This document shows positions 1 to 64,000 of a DNA stretch of 64,000 nucleotides, piece by piece (the first letter of the stretch is position 1; each line of letters opens with the position of its first letter). The stretch is from Octopus sinensis (lineage: Eukaryota). A program made the translations under genes and the position numbers. The notes beneath the pieces are model-generated. The model was not told the DNA's origin. It ran no database searches and was given only the letters and a program-made list of their open reading frames with translations. The DNA lies in assembly GCF_006345805.1 (NCBI RefSeq), contig NC_043011.1:6386001-6450000 (forward strand), given 5' to 3'.

Positions 1-2384
1 GTCCTCTGCTGTCTCGGTCGTTATCCTCCCCCATCTCGGTTGTCGTCCTCCGCTGTCTCGGTCGTTATCCTCCCCCATCTCGGTCGTCGTCCTCTGCTGT
101 CTCGGTCGTTATCCTCCCCCATCTCGGTCGTCGTCCTCTGCTGTCTCGGTCGTTATCCTCCCCCATCTCGGTTGTCGTCCTCCGCTGTCTCAGTCGTTAT
201 CCTCCCCCATGTCGGTTGTTGTCCTCTGCTGCCTCGGTCGTTATCCTCCCCCATCTCGGTCGTTGTCCTCCGCTGTCTCGGTCGTTATCCTCCCCCATCT
301 CGGTCGTCGTCCTCCGCTGTCTCGGTCGTTATCCTCCCCCATCTCGGTTGTTGTCCTCCGCTGTCTCGGTCGTTATCCTCCCCCATCTCGGTTGTCGTCC
401 TCCGCTGTCTCGTCGTTATCCTCCACCATCTCGGTCGTTATCCTCCCCCATCTCGGTCGTCGTCCTCTGCTGTCTCGGTCGTTATCCTCCCCCATCTCGG
501 TTGTTGTCCTCCGCTGTCTCTGTCATTATCCTCCCCCATCTCGGTCATCATCCTCCGCTGTCTCGGTCGTTATCCTCCCCCATCTCGGTTGTTGTCCTCC
601 GCTGTCTCGGTCGCTATCCTCCCCCATCTCGGTCGTCGTCCTCCGCTGTCTCAGTCGTTATCCTCTCCCATCTCGGTTGTCGTCCTCCGCTGTCTCGGTC
701 GTTATCCTCCCCCATCTCGGTCGTTGTCCTCCGCTGTCTCTGTCATTATCCTCCCCCATCTCGGTCATCATCCTCCGCTGTCTCGGTCGTTATCCTCCCC
801 CATCTCGGTTGTTGTCCTCCGCTGTCTCGGTCGTTATCCTCCCCCATCTCGGTTGTTGTCCTCCGCTGTCTCGGTCGTTATCCTCCCCCATCTCGGTCGT
901 CGTCCTCCGCTGTCTCGGTCGTTATCCTCCCCCATCTCGGTCGTCGTCCTCTGCTGTCTCGGTCGTTATCCTCCCCCATCTCGGTTGTTGTCCTCCGCTG
1001 TCTCGGTCGTTATCCTCCCCCATCTCGGTCGTCGATCTCTGCTGTCTCGGTCGTTATCCTCCCCCATCTCGGTCGTTGTCCTCCGCTGTCTCGGTCGTTA
1101 TCCTCCCCCATCTCGGTCGTCGTCCTCCGCTGTCTCGGTCGTTATCCTCCCCCATCTCGGTCGTCGTCCTCTGCTGTCTCGGTTGTTATCCTCCCCCATC
1201 TCGGTCGTCGTCCTCTGCTGTCTTGGTCGTTATCCTCCCCCATCTCGGTTGTTGTCCTCTGCTGTGTCGGTCGTATCCTCCCCCATCTCGTCGTCGTCCT
1301 CCACTGTCTCGGTCGTTATCCTCCCCCATCTCGGTCGTCGTCCTCTGCTGTCTCGGTCGTCGTCCTCGCTGTCTTGGTCGTTATCCTCCCCCATCTCGGT
1401 CGTCGTCCTCTGCTGTCTCGGTCGTTATCCTCCCCCATTTCGGTCGTCGTCCTCCGCTGTCTTGGTCGTTATCCTCCCCCATCTCGGTTGTCGTCCTCCG
1501 CTGTCTCGGTCGTTATCCTCCCCCATCTCGGTCGTCGTCCTCTGCTGTCTCGGTCGTTATCCTCCCCCATCTCGGTTGTCGTCCTCCGCTGTCTCAGTCG
1601 TTATCCTCCCCCATGTCGGTTGTTGTCCTCTGCTGCCTCGGTCGTTATCCTCCCCCATCTCGGTCGTTGTCCTCCGCTGTCTCGGTCGTTATCCTCCCCC
1701 ATCTCGGTTGTTGTCCTCCGCTGTCTCGGTCGTTATCCTCCCCCATCTCGGTTGTTGTCCTCCGCTGTCTCGGTCGTTATCCTCCCCCATCTCGGTCGTC
1801 GTCCTCCGCTGTCTCGGTCGTTATCCTCCCCCATCTCGGTCGTCGTCCTCTGCTGTCTCGGTCGTTATCCTCCCCCATCTCGGTTGTTGTCCTCCGCTGT
1901 CTCTGTCATTATCCTCCCCCATCTCGGTCATCATCCTCCGCTGTCTCGGTCGTTATCCTCCCCCATCTCGGTTGTTGTCCTCCGCTGTCTCGGTCGTTAT
2001 CCTCCCCCATCTCGGTCGTCGTCCTCCGCTGTCTCAGTCGTTATCCTCTCCCATCTCGGTTGTCGTCCTCCGCTGTCTCGGTCGTTATCCTCCCCCATCT
2101 TGGTCGTTGTCCTCCGCTGTCTCTGTCATTATCCTCCCCCATCTCGGTCATCATCCTCCGCTGTCTCGGTCGTTATCCTCCCCCATCTCGGTTGTTGTCC
2201 TCTGCTGTCTCGGTCGTTATCCTCCCCCATCTCGGTTGTCGTCCTCCGCTGTCTCGGTCGTTATCCTCCCCCATCTCGGTTGTCGTCCTCCGCTGTCTCG
2301 GTCGTTATCCTCCCCCATCTCGGTCGTCGTCCTCCGCTGTCTCGGTCGTTATCCCCCCCCATCTCGGTCGTCGTCCTCCGCTGT
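1..2384. repeat. 44-bp minisatellite (~54 copies) built from two diverged 22-bp subunits
   Basis: Unit CTGTCTCGGTCGTTATCCTCCC+CCATCTCGGTCGTCGTCCTCCG; CTGTCTCG recurs at 9 and 53 (period 44). The array runs off the window start. Confidence 0.97.
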
Positions 2385-2535: not shown

Positions 2536-4289
2536 AAGTTTCTGATGAAATGGTGACAATAAAGTGATTGACAGCCTAAACACACACACACACACATGCA
2601 TACAAAATTATGACACTGGTAAAATTATTACAGCAAGTCTGCAGTGATTGTGGTGATGGAGAAAGTGTGGTGGTGGTGGTGGTGGTTAAATGTTTGTAAT
2701 AGGTCCAACATAAGCAATCTTTGCTTGTCTTTGAGCCGTTTAGTGTTTAAGAAGTGCCACCTGAAGTGCTGCACATCAGTTCCATTGTCAACATTAAACC
2801 AAAACACAATATCACAGCTGACATGTAACCATGGACATCGTTCTTTAAACATAAAATACTCTCCATTATTCAGTTGCGTAAATCATCATTCTCTCTACCA
2901 CCCCACTCCGTCTCTTGTGATATTTTCAATGTGTAAGGGTGGCTGTGCTCACACACATGCACACACACACCTTTCCATGTTGTAAAGCTGTCAGCAGATG
3001 TGTGAGTTGTTAGTCTTTTTCATTTGTCTATGTGTTTGTATACACTGTGTGCATGTTCTGTCTGTCTGTCTGTCTATATGTATGTGTGTGTGTGTGTGTA
3101 TACACTGTGTGTGCATGTTCTGTGAGTGTGTGTGTGTGAGAGAGAGCTGTGCTCTAACATTTCTTAATGTATTTAGCACAACATTTCTTATTGGCCCATT
3201 GCCTTAGTAGTTAGGGTGTTTGGCTCCTAAACATACAGATGTGGGTTTGGTACCCATACTTGGTGGCACACTGTGGCCTTCAACAACATATTTCATTTCA
3301 TATTGCCCCAATCTACTCAACTGTAGTTGAATACTAGCCTGAAGCAGTGCTGATGCCCTGCCCTGGCTCTCCAACCCTCACACTCTGAATATTCTACTGG
3401 TTCAAGTGTGAAGGGGTCAAGTGACTATATGAAACAATTAGCAAGAGCATGGTGCATACTGCCAACCCATAGCTGTTCATGAATTGCTCTTGGCTGTACT
3501 GCTGTACAGTTATCATGTGTGTTTTTCATGTGGCACCAGCACAGCTGCTTTCCATGTGGCGCTGGTATGGCAGCTTTTCATGTGGCACCAGCACAGCTGC
3601 TTGTAATGATAGTTTGGGATATATATCTATATGTATGTGTATATATATGGAGAAAATATTGTGGATACTTATTTTATTTGTATCACAACAAGAGCCTAGC
3701 AGATAGTTTAATAGAAATAAAATTTAAATAAACATGACTTGACATAATATAAGCATAAAAATTGCCTACAATCTGGCGACCAGATTGAAATGTGTGTTTA
3801 CTTAAATTTTATTTGTATTCAACTATTTGCTATGTTCTTATTGTGATAGAAATAAAATAAGTATCCACAATATTTTTTTTCCATTTTCTTATATCAATAA
3901 ATGTAAATTAGACTGTTTATCCTTATATATCGAGAGAATTGCCCAATATGTCCATTGATAACACCAGTTGAGTTCCATATTTTATAATCCCTAAGGAGGA
4001 CATTATATCCTCAAATTAACTGATTTATATTTACTTGTATTTATATTCTCTTTTATATATATTCTACTTATTATACAACATTACTCTTTTATGTACACTT
4101 TTTTATGTACATTCCTTTATGTACACTGATTTGTTCTGCTTTTTATATTTAACCCTACAGTCTCTTATGTGGTAGTTTAATAAAGTATCTGATTGAGTAT
4201 TATCTGGTAATTGATATTTGATTTAGTTGTATTTCTCCATTTTCTTATCTTGTATTAGTAATTTGTGGTAAATCATTTTACCTTTGCCC

Positions 4290-4620
4290 CTGAATGTGGC
4301 CGTTGCCAGTGCCCCGACTGACCTCCGTGCCGGTGACATGTAAAAAGCACCATCCGATCGTGGCTGTTGCCAGCAACGCCTGGCCTCCGTGCCAGTGGCA
4401 CGTAAAAAGCACCATCCGATCTTGGCTGTTTGCCAGCCTCGTCTGGCACGTAAAAAGCACCCACTACACTCATGAAGGGGTTGGCGTTAGGAAGGGCATC
4501 CAGCCGTAGAAACATCGCCAGATGAGACTGGGCCTGGTGCAGCCTTCTGGCTTCCCAGACCCCGGTTGAACCGTCCAACCCATGCCAGCATGGAAAGCGG
4601 ACGCTAAATGATGATGATGA
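4290..4620 (+). mobile_element. RTE LINE 3' UTR/tail fragment with internal tandem units
   Basis: Highly similar to 13570-13880; ends in (ATG)n. Confidence 0.8.
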
Positions 4621-9760: not shown

Positions 9761-10488
9761 TACATTATTTACAATTGATAGATATTTGTCCTCATCTTGT
9801 TTGTTGTTAACATAACATTTCGGCTGATATACCCTCCAGCCTTCATCAGGGGTCTTAGGGAAATTTCGAACCTGGGTTCTCATTCCTTAGGTATTTTTTA
9901 ATGTTATTATAACAACAGACCCCTGATGAAGGCTGGAGGGTATATCAGCCGAAACATTGTCATCATCATTATCATTTAATGTCTGCTTTCCAAGCTAGTA
10001 TGGGTTGTACAATTTGACTGAGGACTGGCAAACCAGATGGCTGCACCAGGCTCTAATCTAATCTGGCAGAGTTTCTACAGCTGGATGCCCTTCCTAACGC
10101 CAACCACTCCGAGAGTGTAGTGGGTGCTTTTACATGCCACTGGCATGAGGGCCAGTCAGGCAGTACTGGCAACAGCCACGCTGAAGTGGTGTTTTTTACG
10201 TGCCACCTGCATATAACCAGTCCAGCGGCACTGGCAATGACCTCGCTCAAATGTTTTTCACGTGCCACCAACACAAGTGCCAGTAAGGCGATGCAGGTAG
10301 CGATCACGTTTGAATGGTGCTTTTTACATGCCACCGGCATGGGACAGTCAGCTGCTCTGGCAGCGATCATGTTCGGATGGTGCTCTTAGTGCTCCGCTGG
10401 CATGGGTGCCAGTCATCGAATTTGTGAATTTGATTTGATTAACAACAAACGAGATGAGGACAAATATCCATCAATTGTCAATAATGTA
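9761..10488. mobile_element. Penelope-like terminal repeat in inverted arrangement, right arm split by an RTE tail
   Basis: Perfect 38-bp inverted repeat 9818-9855 / 9917-9954; homology extends to 9761 on the left and resumes at 10439-10488 on the right; each arm has CTGATGA-A-GGCTG..CAGCC-GAAA. Confidence 0.7.
9961..10438 (-). mobile_element. RTE LINE 3' UTR (reverse), inserted in the Penelope-type repeat
   Basis: Reverse complement of the RTE tail, starting with (CAT)n; several internal tandem units. Confidence 0.75.
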
Positions 10489-49875: not shown

Positions 49876-50812
49876 TATATATATAACTAATGTAGGATAA
49901 AATTTTTTTCGGGAAAGATTTTTTTATCAATGGCCAGCATAAGTTTCGAGACGCATAAATTATTATGGTTATTGACACATTTTGTCTTTTTTCGGCATAT
50001 TTGGCATTAGAATTTTTCTTTTGCCCTTTGATATTAACTCTCATGCGACTCTGCATCTTTCTTTCTTTCTCTCCCATTCCCTTTTCGTCTTTTTTCCCTC
50101 ACTTAACTTGTCTCTTCCTCTCTCTCTCATTCTTCATTCTCTCTCTCCTTTCACCATTCTTCATGGTCTCCTCGCACCATTCCCCTTCTTCTCTCTCTTC
50201 CTCTTGCTCCTCCTCCCCCATTCCCGTCGTCCATCTGCGACGATACTCCGTCGTAACTGCTATCCTGTCTTTTCTCGCCCGCCTTCTAAGGCTACTGGTC
50301 GACATTTTTTCTCTCTCGTCGTCCCTATAATCCAGCGTTTGCAATACTTTTTTCGTCTGGCGTTAACAGCCCTTCTTATCTTGTTCTCCTTGTCCTGTCT
50401 CTCACTGTTATATATTTATTTTTCCACTGTTTATATATATATTTTTTACTGTTTATATGTTGTACTGTCGTTACCGTCTTGCTTTTTTTACCCCTCTGCG
50501 AAAAGATCTCAGATTTTAATTGATTTGCTTTTCGCAGGAAGGAAGTTTTCTTCGAAGTATACGTCTCGCTTTTATCCTTCGAAACGTTTAGTAGATGAAA
50601 CCTTAGCGACTGAAGAAGGGGATTTTTCGTTGTGCTTATTGTCCTGTATCTCTTTTTTTGCTTGTCTTGTTCCTTGGTTTGTGTCTATGTTTTTCGTCTC
50701 TCTATGTGTTCGACGTCTTTTTGTGTCCTGTACACATATATGCGTGTATATGTACATGTAGAGGTAGGTACGTACATATATGTTTATATATATGCATATG
50801 TTCTATTTTATT

Positions 50813-58330: not shown

Positions 58331-58793
58331 TCAAGTAAATAAGATTTTTTTTTTTGTTTTTGTAAGCGGAAATCTTTGTGTATGCTGCTCATCCCTAATA
58401 TCAGGAGTGAAATGAATTGACTTAGCTTAGCTCCACCCGACCACGTCGAGGAGCTGAGAGATAGCTCCTGTCTTGTAATTGGAATACCAGCTCCTGGCCA
58501 GGTTTATTTTGGCTCAGTGCTGCGAAATATTGAACCCCTCGTTAGTTTGCTGTGGACTGTAATGCGCTGTACATCATCCTGGCATGGTATCATGGCTAAT
58601 TGGGGTAGGCATGGCTGGCTGTGGGGGGTCAAGAAGGTAACTTGAAAACCACAAGTTGAGGGGTTCAGTCCTTCTGCAGAGATGCTGTTTGAGGCAGATT
58701 TTCTACGGCTGGATGCCCTTCCGGTTGCCATCCTTAACTGGTTTCCATGCAGTACTATCTCAATATTTTCCCTTGTTAAACATGTTAAACATA

Positions 58794-58958
58794 GGTGCAG
58801 AAGTGGCTGTGTGGTAAGTAGCTTGCTAACCAACCACATGGTTCCGGGTTTAGTCCCACTGCGTGGCATCTTGGGCAAGTGTGTTCTGCTGTAGCCCCAG
58901 GCCGACCAATGCCTTGTGAGTGGATTTGGTAGACGGAAACTGAAAGAAGCCTGTCGTA

Positions 58959-59222: not shown

Positions 59223-61399
59223 TATGTTTTTCACAGAAGACTGAAAACAACTCTGCTTATATGACAGTGCCGCTCATTTACAATTATCACATATCTAGAC
59301 AAGGCTGTGCACCCCACCCCCCACACACACACAATATAGGCTTTTTTTCAGCTTCTGTGTATGAAATCGATTCAGAAAATTTTGTCCACTTTTGCACAAT
59401 GGGATTAGACTCAAGACTATATGATTTGGGAAGTAAGTTTCTTAACCATGCGGCCATGCTTGTTCCCTGTATAGTACAAGAAAATAGGGATAATATGACC
59501 CTATGTAAAGTTGGCTTCTGTTTGATGACAAAATTTGCATAACAGTGTTTTCATGAGAAATAGCGCCGAGCAACAATAAAGATGAAGAGCCCTGACCATA
59601 GTTACAAAAGTATAAACCAAGGAATCAATGGTTTTAGTCCATAGTTTTTCCTCTCCTTCTCAAGGATAATATTACTTGTTGTACCTTAAGAGGATTATTT
59701 TATTGTAATCAACTTCTATTGTTTACAGATCAATCAATCAATTAAATTATTGATTAGTAGACAATGTAACTTAAGCCTACAGCCAGTGTGTATGGTTATT
59801 GGTAAAATAACCTTCTCAAAGTACAGCAATATTGATTCCGACCTGGTTTCTCATCACAGTTCGTACAAAGCCAACTTCATTAATGAAAATGTCAAATCAT
59901 TTTCCTTGAATTTAACCCACACTCACTTCACGCTAACCATCATTGTTCTCCCTTTTTAATTTATAAATGCAGTTTTTATATTTTCCGATAGTTCTTTTTT
60001 TTTTTTTTTTTCACTTGTTACAGAGAATGGTGAAATGCAGAGATTAGTTTTAGGGGGGTTAAACACACATAGACTGTGGGCATGCTGGGGCTCAGCCCTG
60101 AAGGGTTCAGTTGAACAAATTGACTGCAGTACTTGTGTTTTATGTAGTCTGATATGTAGTTTTATGTACCTGCTAAGTTACAGGGATATAAACAAACCAA
60201 CACTAGTATCCAAGTGATGATGGGACAAACACACACACACACACACATGTATATATGATGGACTTGTTTCAGTTTCTGCCTACCAAATTCACTCGTAAAG
60301 CATTGGTTGGCCCGGGACTTAACTTGAAACAATACATTTGCAATGAGAACTGCTTTAACCTCGTGACCAATGCTGTGTTTTTGTTTGTTTAATCTCTCAG
60401 CATTCGGATTACTGCCAAGTGCAAAACTTATTCATTCATGCTTTGAATTTATCCTTCATTATCTTGTAGTCTTGAGATTTTGATGATGTAATTATTTTTT
60501 AGAAAGATATTGTAGGGTAAGTGTAAGAAGCCAGATGTGGCCAGTTTGAACATAAAACAGGCAGAATATTTTGGTTGGATACTGTTGGTTTAAATGTTAA
60601 CCTGTTTAGCCAGTGTTTTCATAAATCCATTTCTCTATATTTAATCAATTTTTCTATATTTCATCCATTGATTTGTTTCCTTGTATTATTGTGCATATTT
60701 TCCAGCAGGCAGGGCTTTGGATAGGGAGGTATTTGAGACGGGATTTTACTGTTGGATGATCCTTTTATTCAAAGAAGGGAATTTTTTTTTTTTTACTTCA
60801 TAGATCTTTGAAAACACAAAGCAGCTAGTTATAATGTCAATAAGCAATGGAAGCCTCATTCATTGTTTTGCTGAAGCAAAAGCCATGAAATGTCAACAAT
60901 CATGCAGGCATGCCTGTACACGTACTGGCAACTAACACATGCATGCACGCACACATGCACGCACACATGCACGCACGCACAGAGAGAGAGAGAGAGAGAG
61001 AGGGGGACAGACCTTTTAGTTTCCATCTACCAAATTTACTCACTAGCCATTGGTCATCCTGAGGTTTAAATAGAGTTTGCCCAATGTACCCTGCAGTGGG
61101 GCTGTGCCTGAAATCACACCTATGTCTGTCCCCATTTTAAATAAATCCAATGTTCATCCATGGCCATGATTATATCTGGAACCATTCATGTGTTTTCTGT
61201 TAGGGCTTCAGCCCTGCCAAAGCCTTGTGAGTAGATTTGGAAAGCAGAAACTGAAAGAAACCTGTTCTGTATGTTTGTGTCTTTGTGTTTGTCCCCCGCC
61301 ACTGCTTGACAACCAGTTGGTGTGTTTATGTCCTTGTAACTTAGCGTTTCGACAAAAGAGACTTATAGAATAAGTACTAGGCTTTAAAAAAAAAAGTCC

Positions 61400-61705
61400 T
61401 GTGTGGCATCTTGGGCAAGTGTCTTTTGCTATAGCCCCAGGCCGACCAATGCCTTGTGAGTGGATTTGGTAGACGGAAACTGAAAGAAGCCTGTCGTATA
61501 TATGTATATATATATGTGTGTTTGTGTGCCTGTGTTTGTCCCCGATGCTGGTGTGTTTACGTCCCCATCACTTAGCGGTTCGGCAAAAAGATACCGATAG
61601 AATAAGTACTGGGCTTACAAAGAATAAGTCCCGGGGTCGATTTGCTCAACTAAAGGCGGTGCTCCAGCATGGCCGCAGTCAAATGACTGAAACAAGTAAA
61701 AGATA
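61400..61705 (+). mobile_element. SINE family A, 5'-truncated
   Basis: Begins at GTGGCATCTTGGGCAAG. Confidence 0.85.
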
Positions 61706-62007: not shown

Positions 62008-62141
62008 TTTCTATGGTGTTTGGCATTCCGACGATAAAGCGAGACAGAGTCAGTTACCTGCGTCGAACGTTGCATTCACTGATTGATGGACTTAACGAAG
62101 AAGAGAGAGAGGACTGTCTAATTATTGTGTTCGTGGCTGAG
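62008..62141 (+). CDS. MGAT4: MGAT4A/B-like coding exon 4 (start of catalytic domain)
   Basis: Acceptor TTGCAG|, donor GAG|GTATGG; [45 protein letters not shown] is the conserved GT54 family motif. Confidence 0.95.
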
Positions 62142-62580
62142 GTATGGTTAATGCTGTTGTTGTTGTTGTTGTCTGGCCCCAGTTCGGCCCTGAATAAGCA
62201 CATCCTGCGGTTCAAGATGTTCCAACTGTGACCTTCCCATCTTTTTGTATATCTAGGACTATGTGTCTCTTCTTTTCATTGATGGTAGGGTGTGATTTGA
62301 AAGAATTTGGCTGCTATTTTTAGTAGGTCAAGTGATGATAGTTTTCTTTTTTTTTTTTGTTTAAAAATATATGGTGGTCATTGCAATGTGACAGTTTGTT
62401 CACTGATCTGTTTTGGTCATGTATGGTGTGTAATGTAAGTACATGAGGTGGGGCAAAGGTTTGTACAAAAAATAAAGGAAGGAAAAAAAAACCCACCCCA
62501 AAATAAGAAGGTCAAATGGTAATAAAAGTGGAGAGAACAGTTGTTTGTTGGTAAATAGTCAGTTCCTATCCATTCAGGCA

Positions 62581-62680
62581 NNNNNNNNNNNNNNNNNNNN
62601 NNNNNNNNNNNNNNNNNNNNNNNNNNNNNNNNNNNNNNNNNNNNNNNNNNNNNNNNNNNNNNNNNNNNNNNNNNNNNNNN
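62581..62680. other. Assembly gap (100 N)
   Basis: Run of N. Confidence 1.
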
Positions 62681-62850
62681 ACTCTTATGTTGGAGCGAGG
62701 TCATTTAACCCTATTATCTCCCCTAATTTTGCTCTGTGTCTCACGTTTGATCTTTGACTTCTGGCCGAAATCAGATCGCCATGTTGATTTGCAAGCCTCT
62801 GCACGCATTTTTTTTCCTCTCCTTCTTTCTGTGTTTTTTTTCTCTGTGTA

Positions 62851-62888
62851 TCTTTCTGTTGAAGAGCGTAGGCTCGAAACGTTAAAGA
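62851..62888 (+). ncRNA. Minimal type I hammerhead-like motif, copy 1
   Basis: TCTTT-CTGTTGA-A-GAGC-GTAG-GCTC-GAA-ACGT-T-AAAGA. Confidence 0.6.
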
Positions 62889-63750
62889 CTTGTTTTATTT
62901 ATATTTCCTGAGCGCCATACTAATACAATTGTTTGTTTGTATTCCACCTGCCTTCGTCTTTTGTCTATTTTCATAAAGCTTCCCGTTATATATATCCTTT
63001 CCCCCGACCCCTACTTCTTCAGTCCTTCATCCTTTCACCCCTACTCCCCTTCCCTTCTTCCCTCTTTCTCCCTCTCCTTCCCTTCTTCCCTCTTTCTCCC
63101 TCCCTCCTTCCCTCTTCCCCTTCCCTCTGCTCCCTCACTCCCCCTCGACCTCTTTCCTCCTTCCTCCCCCTCCTCCTCTTCCTTCTCCCCCTCCTCTCCT
63201 CTTCCCCCTCTCCTCCCCCTCTCCTCCTCACTACACCACACGACTTCACACATCACATCATGTGTGATGTGCCATGCTAGTACATACACCAACTAATACA
63301 TACTAATACGTACTAATACATACTAATAATACACCAACCCTATACATACACACGTCCAGACCCCTCATACGCACTTATACTCTCTCATACACACACACCA
63401 CAACACTTATACATACTAATACGTACTAATACATACTAATACATACACCAACCCCATACATACGCACGTCCACACCAATCCTACGCAATAATACTCTCTC
63501 AACACACACACACACACACCCTTATACATACTAATACATACACCAACCATATATACACACGTCCAGACCCCTCCTACGCACTATTAGCTGGTCCTTCAAC
63601 CATATCAACCCCATTATCTCCCCTTATTTCGCTCTCGCGTCTCATGTTTGATCTTTGACCTCTGGCCGAAATCAGATCGCCATGTTGATTCGTTAGCTAC
63701 TGCACGCATTTTTTTTCTCCTTCTTTCTGTGTTTTTTTTTCTTCTGTGTA

Positions 63751-63788
63751 TCTTTCTGTTGAAGAGCGTAGGCTCGAAACGTTAAAGA
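63751..63788 (+). ncRNA. Minimal type I hammerhead-like motif, copy 2
   Basis: Identical to 62851-62888. Confidence 0.6.
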
Positions 63789-64000
63789 CTTGTTTTATTT
63801 ATATTTCCTGAGCGCCATACTAATACAATTGTTCGTTTGTTTTCCACCTGCCTTCGTCTTTTGTCTATTTTCATAAAGCTTCCCGTTATATAATATATAT
63901 ATATGATGTATATGTTATATATATATGTATGTGTATTATATATATATGTATGTAATATATATATATGTTAGTATATATGTAGATATATATATATGTTGTG

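What the first reader, a model, noticed from the sequence alone, without database searches (positions are those of the whole stretch)
62707..63890. Tandem pair of minimal hammerhead ribozymes 900 nt apart: candidate retrozyme or circular-RNA unit in an MGAT4 intron
Seen: both 284-bp repeats carry the identical motif TCTTT|CUGUUGA|A|GAGC-GUAG-GCUC|GAA|ACGU|U|AAAGA. It has a perfect 5-bp stem I, a 4-bp stem II, a palindromic ACGU stem III and a GUU site, and is unchanged although other parts of the repeats have diverged. Established: Penelope-like elements and metazoan retrozymes carry minimal type I hammerheads with palindromic stem III that cleave as dimers when tandem copies are co-transcribed. 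Inference: cleavage at 62883 and 63783 would release a 900-nt monomer sense to MGAT4. The core has a non-canonical A6U (CUGUUGA) in both copies, so it is either a variant ribozyme or a dead one.
Basis: partly seen in the sequence, partly recalled or inferred. Interest (0 to 1): 0.75.

Follow-up and report, generated by a model that had tools for sequence, protein, structure and literature searches.

The report
Penelope-type minimal hammerhead pair, core-mutated
Two 288-bp direct repeats in an MGAT4 intron each carry a motif built like the minimal hammerhead ribozymes of Penelope-like retrotransposons, but with a change at a conserved core base (A6 to U), so it is most likely a crippled relic of a known kind of mobile element, not a new working ribozyme.

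Summary
Repeats at 62705-62992 and 63605-63892 are 288 bp long, about 92-93% identical and 900 nt apart. Each holds the same 38-nt motif (62851-88, 63751-88), sense to MGAT4.

The motif meets every published structural mark of Penelope-like-element (PLE) minimal hammerheads except A6:
- 5-bp helix I
- an extra base between A9 and G10.1
- a G10.1-C11.1 pair
- a palindromic ACGU with no loop 3
- location in flanking direct repeats

A descriptor scan finds only these two sites. Shuffles give about 0.003 such sites per window. A metagenome scan with position 6 left free found four contigs (three different sequences) with the same helix II and ACGU, all with A6.

Rfam finds nothing, but it also misses those canonical relatives. 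The identical stretch runs 91 nt, and the whole 3' half is near-identical, so motif invariance is not specific. U6 pairs with A15.1 in a more stable rod-like hairpin. Published mutagenesis reports low activity for mutants of the CUGA turn.

The source genome could not be reached, so family consensus and covariation are untested.

Verdict: probably a non-autonomous PLE or retrozyme-type partial tandem with a disabled hammerhead. Modest interest.

The parts
62705..62992 (+). Direct repeat 1 (pseudo-LTR-like, 288 bp). Its left edge is its own boundary: 62681-62704 is not homologous to the sequence ahead of repeat 2.
63605..63892 (+). Direct repeat 2 (288 bp, 93% identical to repeat 1). It ends where a (TA)n-rich microsatellite begins.
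62851..62888 (+). Minimal type I hammerhead-like motif, copy 1. Helix I is 62851-55 with 62884-88. Core CUGUUGA is 62856-62. The extra A is 62863. Helix II is 62864-67 with 62872-75, and loop GUAG is 62868-71. GAA is 62876-78, palindrome ACGU is 62879-82 and U17 is 62883.
   Evidence: features compared with PMC4209133
63751..63788 (+). The same motif, copy 2, identical base for base. The predicted cleavage site is after 63783.
62859..62859 (+). Core position 6 is U instead of the conserved A (also at 63759). In the minimum-energy fold it pairs with A15.1 (62879).
62993..63604 (+). Internal 612-bp body with no protein-family match. It holds CT-rich low complexity at 63044-63229 and a 114-bp tandem of 2.2 copies at 63292-63541.
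63887..63997 (.). (TA)n-rich microsatellite abutting the 3' end of repeat 2. Insertion bias toward microsatellites, (TA)n in Naiads, is reported for PLEs.
   Evidence: PMC8557442
62581..62680 (.). Assembly gap of 100 N, 24 nt upstream of repeat 1. It hides the true left flank.
62008..62141 (+). MGAT4 exon (AG acceptor, GT donor). The element lies 564 nt downstream in the following intron, in the sense orientation.

Best explanation
The locus is a head-to-tail partial tandem of about 1.3 copies of a roughly 900-bp non-coding unit. It reads as a 288-bp repeat, a 612-bp low-complexity body and a second 288-bp repeat. This is the pseudo-LTR layout left by Penelope-like elements (PLEs) and their non-autonomous derivatives, the animal non-LTR retrozymes. 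It sits in an MGAT4 intron, in the sense orientation, next to a (TA)n microsatellite. Each repeat carries a PLE-type minimal type I hammerhead with no loop 3. Helix III could form only between two copies, through the palindrome ACGU.

Inferred mechanism. In the parent family the motif would have cut multimeric transcripts at GUU|A as a double hammerhead. Here the core reads CUGUUGA (A6 to U) in both copies, so the change predates their split. U6 disrupts the CUGA uridine turn and pairs with A15.1, which favours an inactive rod-like hairpin. The pair is therefore most likely catalytically crippled or dead, and the MGAT4 pre-mRNA is probably not cut to any useful extent.

Shown: the anatomy, its rarity by chance, the existence of canonical relatives elsewhere, and the folding preference. 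Inferred: the PLE or retrozyme origin and the loss of activity.
For: [quoted passage not shown] Helix I is 5 bp, within the 4-5 bp reported there.

The motif is the only hit in 64 kb on both strands, against about 0.003 expected.

The pattern CTGNTGANGAGCNNNNGCTCGAAACGT, with position 6 free, found 4 metagenome contigs (3 different sequences). All read CTGATGA and carry the extra base. The same pattern found 0 matches in 596 Gb of prokaryotic genomes and 0 in viral contigs. This helix II plus ACGU flavour is therefore a genuine natural hammerhead type, and the window copy differs from it at position 6 and in three of the four loop 2 bases.

PLE biology fits the layout: partial tandems forming pLTRs, HHRs near the 3' end, microsatellite insertion bias and non-autonomous derivatives (PMC8557442). 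Retrozyme units of up to 972 bp, often intronic, are related to pLTRs.

For loss of activity: the MFE hairpin is -10.8 kcal/mol against -8.4 for the hammerhead fold. The hammerhead-competent fraction is 1.3-1.6% with U6 and 3-9% with A6. Mutants of the CUGA turn have low activity. The natural A6C variant is about 10^4-10^5-fold slower in Mg2+ than in Mn2+ at 0.3 mM. Even canonical min-HHRs cleave poorly in vitro.
Against: No RT or endonuclease ORF lies between the repeats. The only RT in the window is a LINE-type RVT_1 at 34441-36183. No convincing target-site duplication was found, and the left flank is cut by the gap. Helix II is 4 bp, shorter than the 7-8 bp reported for Schistosoma PLE motifs, although the canonical metagenome relatives also have 4 bp. 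Similarity to those relatives is confined to the motif, and the scan pattern was derived from the window motif itself. Rfam gives no hammerhead hit, which is uninformative given the control. Ordinary local tandem duplications occur elsewhere in this window, for example the roughly 1.51-kb duplication at about 47.2-50.0 kb. A duplicated segment is therefore not in itself a PLE signature. Whether this species has PLEs at all is unknown.
Confidence: 0.6

Rival explanations
1. The motif is a chance look-alike. An ordinary local duplication of intronic sequence happens to contain an imperfect 13-bp hairpin that matches 10 of 11 conserved hammerhead core positions. There is no ribozyme ancestry and no mobile element.
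For: Allowing one core substitution, shuffles give about 0.003 hits per 64 kb. By my extrapolation that is on the order of 100 per genome of 2-3 Gb, so a scan of many windows will meet some. The two copies are one event. The MFE structure is a simple rod-like hairpin. Unrelated tandem duplications of about 1.5 kb exist in the same window. There is no RT, no target-site duplication and no further copies in 64 kb. Motif invariance is explained by the near-identical 3' half.
Against: All 4 shuffle hits had a 4-bp helix I, and none reached the 5 bp seen here. The motif also carries the PLE-specific extras: a bulged base at 9a, G10.1-C11.1 and the ACGU palindrome. It shares its helix II and helix III sequence with independent canonical hammerheads, and that pattern has 0 matches in 596 Gb of prokaryotic DNA. 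A chance motif that also falls in a duplicated segment (about 5% of this window, my estimate) comes to roughly 1e-4 per window by my arithmetic.
Confidence: 0.2
2. It is an active variant ribozyme. CUGUUGA is the working core of a living retrozyme family. The two copies pair through ACGU in the MGAT4 pre-mRNA or in the element's own transcript, cleave after 62883 and 63783, and release a 900-nt RNA that is circularised.
For: U6 is shared by both copies even though their 5' halves differ by about 15%, so it predates their split. The 3' 151 nt, which includes the motif, differs at only 3 positions. By my reading of the alignment, 7 of its 8 CpG sites are intact in both copies, against several decayed CpGs in the 5' half. 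That could reflect constraint. A natural position-6 variant (A6C, phage Bcep176) is active with Mn2+. Rare core variants are tolerated in nature. The 900-nt unit size is within the retrozyme range.
Against: No activity or expression data exist. Single mutants of the CUGA turn had low activity and were not rescued by second mutations, apart from the C3-G8 pair swap. Min-HHRs are poor cleavers even with a canonical core. The intermolecular helix III is only 4 bp between sites 900 nt apart. U6 favours the inactive hairpin. Gene conversion between nearby direct repeats explains the clean 3' half equally well. All four natural relatives found have A6.
Confidence: 0.1
3. The duplication is an assembly artefact next to the gap. 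One real copy was assembled twice.
For: Repeat 1 starts 24 nt after a 100-N gap. The region is rich in low-complexity sequence, which is hard to assemble. Another duplication in the window, at about 47.2-50.0 kb, has 100% identical blocks and could itself be artefactual.
Against: Both copies lie in one contig on the same side of the gap. They are separated by 612 bp of unique sequence, differ at 24 positions concentrated in the 5' half, and have different left flanks. False duplications are normally near-identical and straddle gaps.
Confidence: 0.05

Closest known systems
Minimal hammerheads (min-HHRs) in the pseudo-LTRs of Penelope-like elements (Cervera & de la Pena 2014, PMC4209133)
   Same: It is a type I motif with no loop 3 and a palindromic 15.2-16.2 (ACGU), so helix III forms only in a dimer. 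It has an unpaired base between A9 and G10.1, a G10.1-C11.1 pair and a short 5-bp helix I. It lies in each of two direct repeats that flank an internal region.
   Different: Core position 6 is U, not A. Helix II is 4 bp, against 6-8 bp in the described Schistosoma and Drosophila motifs. The 612-bp body has no RT/GIY-YIG ORF. No family of copies could be shown.
Animal non-LTR retrozymes (Cervera & de la Pena 2020, PMC7229834; Li et al. 2026 preprint, 10.64898/2026.07.22.740005)
   Same: It is non-coding and arranged head to tail with one type I hammerhead per unit. The 900-nt unit is within the reported 51-972 bp. Intronic copies are common. Retrozymes are reported to be related to PLE pLTRs.
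   Different: Typical retrozymes have units of about 300 bp with canonical type I hammerheads and loop 1-loop 2 contacts, often in many copies. Here there are only about 1.3 units, a min-type motif and a mutated core. The unit GC is 45%, at the edge of the reported range of below 45%. No circular RNA evidence exists.
Natural position-6 core variant: A6C hammerhead of phage Bcep176 (Perreault et al. 2011, PMC3088659; Naghdi et al. 2020, PMC7151607)
   Same: It is a natural sequence with a substitution at A6 in an otherwise consensus core.
   Different: That variant is A6C, in a full-length tertiary-stabilised ribozyme, and was shown to cleave (weakly in Mg2+, well in Mn2+). I found no report of a natural A6U variant in these papers, and this motif is untested.
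Plant LTR retrozymes (Cervera et al. 2016, PMC4918200)
   Same: Two direct repeats of about 300 bp each carry a hammerhead and flank a non-coding body. The cleavage-to-cleavage distance is 600-1000 nt.
   Different: Plant elements have type III hammerheads and a GC content above 55%. From my own knowledge, they also have a primer-binding site, a polypurine tract and 4-bp target-site duplications. None of these is seen here.

Membership tests
Hammerhead ribozyme (catalytic core consensus) | 5' core box C3 U4 G5 A6 N7 G8 A9 | tested here: not met
   The sequence is CUGUUGA, with U at position 6 in both copies (62859, 63759). The other six positions fit.
Hammerhead ribozyme (catalytic core consensus) | G12 A13 A14, A15.1-U16.1, and H17 not G | tested here: met
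   GAA is at 62876-78. A15.1 is 62879 and U16.1 is 62882, pairing only in trans through ACGU. H17 is U at 62883.
Hammerhead ribozyme (catalytic core consensus) | Three helices around the core | tested here: inconclusive
   Helix I (5 bp) and helix II (4 bp) are present. Helix III exists only as a 4-bp intermolecular palindrome. The predicted MFE is a competing rod-like hairpin, -10.8 against -8.4 kcal/mol.
Hammerhead ribozyme (catalytic core consensus) | Site-specific self-cleavage | not testable with these tools
   This needs in vitro transcription or RNA end mapping.
Rfam hammerhead families (RF00163, RF00008, RF02275-7) | Covariance-model score at or above the gathering threshold | tested here: not met
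   There was no hit at gathering on the window or at E <= 10 on 1.3 kb. As a control, canonical-core min-HHRs in L001, L002 and L004 are also missed at E <= 10. The models do not cover this architecture.
PLE min-HHR (PMC4209133) | [quoted passage not shown] | tested here: met
   A at 62863 and 63763.
PLE min-HHR (PMC4209133) | G10.1-C11.1 pair | tested here: met
   G at 62864 pairs with C at 62875.
PLE min-HHR (PMC4209133) | Palindromic 15.2-16.2 and no loop 3 | tested here: met
   ACGU at 62879-82.
PLE min-HHR (PMC4209133) | Located in both flanking direct repeats (pLTRs) | tested here: met
   One motif lies in each 288-bp repeat, 104 nt from the repeat's 3' end.
PLE min-HHR (PMC4209133) | Genome-wide consensus families with covariation | not testable with these tools
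   The source genome is not in any searchable collection. The ORF spanning the repeat had no protein-database match, the MGAT4 exon peptide found no relatives and the exact-sequence look-up found nothing. The best RT relative is only 54% identical.
Penelope-like element (autonomous) | RT plus GIY-YIG endonuclease ORF between the repeats | tested here: not met
   The 612-bp body is low complexity. Its ORFs have no Pfam hit at E <= 0.1.
Animal non-LTR retrozyme | Head-to-tail repeats, each with a type I HHR, unit size in the reported range | tested here: met
   Two motifs lie 900 nt apart in about 1.3 units. The reported range is 51-972 bp.
Animal non-LTR retrozyme | Canonical type I HHR with loop 1-loop 2 contacts | tested here: not met
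   It is a min-type motif with no local loop 1 and a GUAG loop 2. PMC7229834 describes min variants as belonging to PLEs.
Animal non-LTR retrozyme | Expressed as circular RNA of unit length | not testable with these tools
   No transcript data are available.
Plant LTR retrozyme | Type III HHR, PBS/PPT, 4-bp TSD, GC above 55% | tested here: not met
   The topology is type I, no flanking duplication was found, and the unit GC is 45%.

The most novel reading that the evidence does not exclude
CUGUUGA is not decay but the consensus core of a living family of 900-nt non-autonomous PLE or retrozyme elements. In that case a natural A6U hammerhead still cleaves as a dimer, perhaps with Mn2+ or a host factor. 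It would release a 900-nt RNA, possibly circular, from the MGAT4 intron. The near-identical 3' halves of the repeats would then reflect constraint on the ribozyme and the 3' end.
Probability: 0.08. Interest if true: 0.55.

Novelty: new member of a known kind. Interest (0 to 1): 0.27.

Why it matters
If the main reading is right, this is one more decayed copy of a class of elements already known to be abundant in animal genomes. It adds little beyond annotation. It does show that helix-III-less hammerheads escape the Rfam models. If U6 turned out to be the family consensus and active, it would be a second natural position-6 core variant. That would give a useful test case for how the uridine turn tolerates change in dimer-dependent minimal hammerheads. 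It would also be an example of a ribozyme cutting inside a host gene's pre-mRNA.

Tried and rejected
1. Rfam at gathering and at E <= 10 gave no hammerhead hit. I rejected this as evidence against the motif after the control showed that Rfam also misses canonical min-HHRs.
2. I tried to reach other copies in the source genome through spurious ORFs. The 74-aa ORF spanning the repeat has no relatives. The MGAT4 exon ORF is not on record and has no word-sharing relatives. The LINE RT's best relative is only 54% identical. The species is therefore absent from the protein collections, and the family consensus is untestable here.
3. The metagenome hits L001-L004 have no homology to the window beyond the motif and no RT ORFs nearby. 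They serve only as independent examples of the ribozyme type.
4. The literature string search for the motif found only unrelated primers and a clam miRNA.
5. The target-site duplication search found only a non-adjacent shared 6-mer, TATGTT. I do not count it.
6. The alternative register (U3 U4 G5 A6 A7 G8 A9 with a 2-bp helix II) needs a U3-G8 wobble plus a 2-nt insertion before G12. I rejected it as worse than A6U plus the known extra base.
7. My nested-model evaluation of the double-hammerhead fold failed, because the intermolecular helix III is a pseudoknot in that notation. I give only a qualitative statement that a 4-bp ACGU duplex is marginal.
8. The first genome-contig scan got no answer from the server. 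The repeat succeeded.

Full report
**What is there**

Reading 62400-64000 and aligning the two segments confirms two direct repeats, at 62705-62992 and 63605-63892. They are 288 bp long and 93% identical by BLAST. They start 900-901 nt apart and are separated by 612 bp. Both lie in one contig to the right of a 100-N gap (62581-62680). The 24 nt between the gap and repeat 1 do not match the sequence ahead of repeat 2, so the repeat has its own 5' boundary. The structure is about 1.3 head-to-tail copies of a 900-bp unit, not a full tandem pair.

The body contains CT-rich low complexity (63044-63229) and a 114-bp tandem of 2.2 copies (63292-63541). Repeat 2 ends against a (TA)n-rich microsatellite (63887-63997). 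ORFs in the body have no Pfam match. The window holds no further copy of the repeat.

**The motif**

Both repeats carry an identical UCUUU-CUGUUGA-A-GAGC-GUAG-GCUC-GAA-ACGU-U-AAAGA at 62851-62888 and 63751-63788. The parts are:
- Helix I: 5 bp.
- Helix II: 4 bp, with a G10.1-C11.1 pair.
- Helix III: only the palindrome ACGU, with no loop.
- Predicted cleavage: after U17, at 62883 and 63783.
- Deviations from the classical core: U at position 6 (62859, 63759) and an extra A after A9.

An alternative register (U3...A9 with a 2-bp helix II) needs more violations, so I dropped it.

**Is it more than chance?**

I wrote a descriptor following Cervera & de la Pena 2014. It finds only these two sites in the window on both strands with up to one core substitution, even with helices relaxed to 3 bp. 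It recovers canonical controls.

In 1235 dinucleotide-preserving shuffles there were 0 canonical hits and 4 one-substitution hits. None had a helix I of 5 bp or more. That is about 0.003 per 64 kb. The motif is therefore far from chance for one window. By my extrapolation, a genome of 2-3 Gb would still hold on the order of 100 chance one-substitution hits. The two copies are one duplication event, not two observations.

**Comparison with known minimal hammerheads**

- no helix III or loop 3
- palindromic 15.2-16.2
- a conserved unpaired nucleotide between 9 and 10.1
- a conserved G10.1-C11.1 pair
- a helix I of 4-5 bp
- action proposed as dimers, with low activity in vitro

The window motif meets each of these. 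The 'extra A' that looked like a defect is a family hallmark. Only A6 fails, and helix II is shorter than in the described Schistosoma motifs.

**Independent relatives**

I scanned metagenome contigs for CTGNTGANGAGCNNNNGCTCGAAACGT, leaving position 6 free. Four contigs matched (three different sequences). All read CUGAUGA, carry the extra base, have loop UAAC and end in ACGU plus C or U. The same pattern has no match in 596 Gb of prokaryotic genomes or in the viral collection.

This helix II and helix III flavour is therefore a genuine natural hammerhead type. The window motif is that type with A6 changed to U and three of the four loop 2 bases different. Similarity to those contigs stops at the motif, and they carry no RT nearby.

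**Rfam**

No hammerhead family matches at gathering or at E <= 10 on 1.3 kb. As a control I scanned L001, L002 and L004, which have canonical cores. Rfam misses them too. The negative result says nothing about this motif.

**Conservation between the two copies**

There are 21 differences in the 5' 137 nt and only 3 in the 3' 151 nt (Fisher p = 5e-5). The identical run is 91 nt (62843-62933). By my reading of the alignment, 7 of 8 CpG sites in the 3' half are intact in both copies, while several in the 5' half have decayed. Gene conversion between nearby repeats, two different template RNAs, or constraint on the 3' end could each explain this. Two copies cannot separate them. What does follow is that U6 predates the split of the two copies.

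**Would it work?**

- Folding. The minimum-energy fold is a rod-like hairpin in which U4, G5, U6 and U7 pair with G16.2, C15.2, A15.1 and A14. It is -10.8 kcal/mol, against -8.4 for the hammerhead fold. The hammerhead-competent fraction of the ensemble is 1.3-1.6% with U6, against 3-9% for an in-silico A6 version.
- Mutagenesis. Roberts et al. 2023 (PMC9901934) report low activity for single and double mutants of the CUGA uridine turn, apart from the C3-G8 pair swap.
- Natural variants. The only natural position-6 variant I found is A6C in phage Bcep176. In the mouse-gut ribozyme the same substitution made cleavage about 10^4-10^5-fold slower in Mg2+ than in Mn2+ at 0.3 mM, and overall activity is low (PMC7151607 and PMC3088659).
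- Baseline. Canonical min-HHRs already cleave poorly in vitro.
- Helix III. A 4-bp intermolecular helix between sites 900 nt apart is marginal. This is my estimate; the nested model could not evaluate it.

I therefore judge the pair crippled or dead.

**Context**

MGAT4 is confirmed. Exon peptides from about 56.9 kb and from 62008-62141 (+) hit Pfam PF04666 at E = 1.8e-15 and cover only profile positions 3-79 of 280. The exon has AG and GT splice signals. The element lies 564 nt into the next intron, in the sense orientation.

PLEs form partial tandems with pLTRs, carry HHRs near their 3' ends, favour microsatellite targets and spawn non-autonomous derivatives (PMC8557442). Animal non-LTR retrozymes have consensus units of 51-972 bp, are related to pLTRs, and about 44% of Xenopus tropicalis copies overlap introns. 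The architecture fits this group.

Against over-reading it, the window also holds an unrelated tandem duplication of about 1.51 kb at about 47.2-50.0 kb. Local duplications are not rare here.

**What could not be done**

The source genome is out of reach. The ORF over the repeat, the MGAT4 exon and the LINE RT have no close relatives in the protein collections. The DNA collections do not hold this species. Family consensus, covariation, a parent PLE, the empty site, read support and expression all remain open.

**Verdict**

- Best reading (0.6): a non-autonomous PLE or retrozyme-type partial tandem whose minimal hammerhead carries an inactivating A6U.
- Chance look-alike inside a local duplication: 0.2.
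- Active U6 variant: 0.1.
- Assembly artefact: 0.05.

It is a new member of a known kind and of modest interest.

Noticed in passing
window 62705-62992 vs 63605-63892: Divergence between the two repeats is strongly uneven. The 5' 137 nt differ at about 15% of positions, many of them CpG/TpG changes. The 3' 151 nt differ at 2%, with nearly all CpGs kept. Gene conversion, two template RNAs or constraint could each explain this, and none can be chosen with two copies.
   Followed up: partly
window 1-2384: A 44-bp satellite array of 54 copies, 91% matching, runs off the left end of the window. It produces long spurious ORFs in three frames.
   Followed up: partly
window about 47176-49992: A tandem duplication with a period of about 1.51 kb has blocks of 124-300 nt at 100% identity. 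It is either very recent or an assembly duplication. It shows that local duplications unrelated to ribozymes occur in this window.
   Followed up: partly
window 38760-43586 (- strand): A series of ORFs from a Helitron-like element. One hits Pfam Helitron_like_N at E = 1.5e-36. Others look like PIF1-type helicase fragments, but I judged that by eye only.
   Followed up: partly
window 34441-36183 (+): A LINE-type reverse transcriptase ORF (RVT_1, E = 2.7e-29) is embedded in very long AT-rich trinucleotide-like microsatellites at about 33.3-35.2 kb and 36.5-37.0 kb. Its best database relative is only 54% identical.
   Followed up: partly
window e.g. 4273-4578, 10053-10389, 13459-13776, 23259-23519, 47331-47672, 58504-58878: A short interspersed repeat recurs in both orientations across the window. 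It is seen as recurring pseudo-peptides such as '...[16 protein letters not shown]...' and '...[12 protein letters not shown]...' in the ORF list. It was not characterised.
   Followed up: no
window 61013-61064 / 61435-61486 and 61187-61292 / 61416-61521: Inverted and direct repeat pairs (52-106 nt, 73-83% matching) lie just upstream of the MGAT4 exon. They are probably copies of an interspersed repeat.
   Followed up: no
L001 3586-3616 (+), L002 938-964 (-), L003 3045-3071 (-), L004 2097-2123 (-): Environmental contigs carry canonical-core minimal hammerheads of the form CUGAUGA-N-GAGC-UAAC-GCUC-GAAACGU-H. No Rfam model detects them, even at E <= 10. L002 and L003 are identical across the 147 nt inspected around the motif.
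   Followed up: partly
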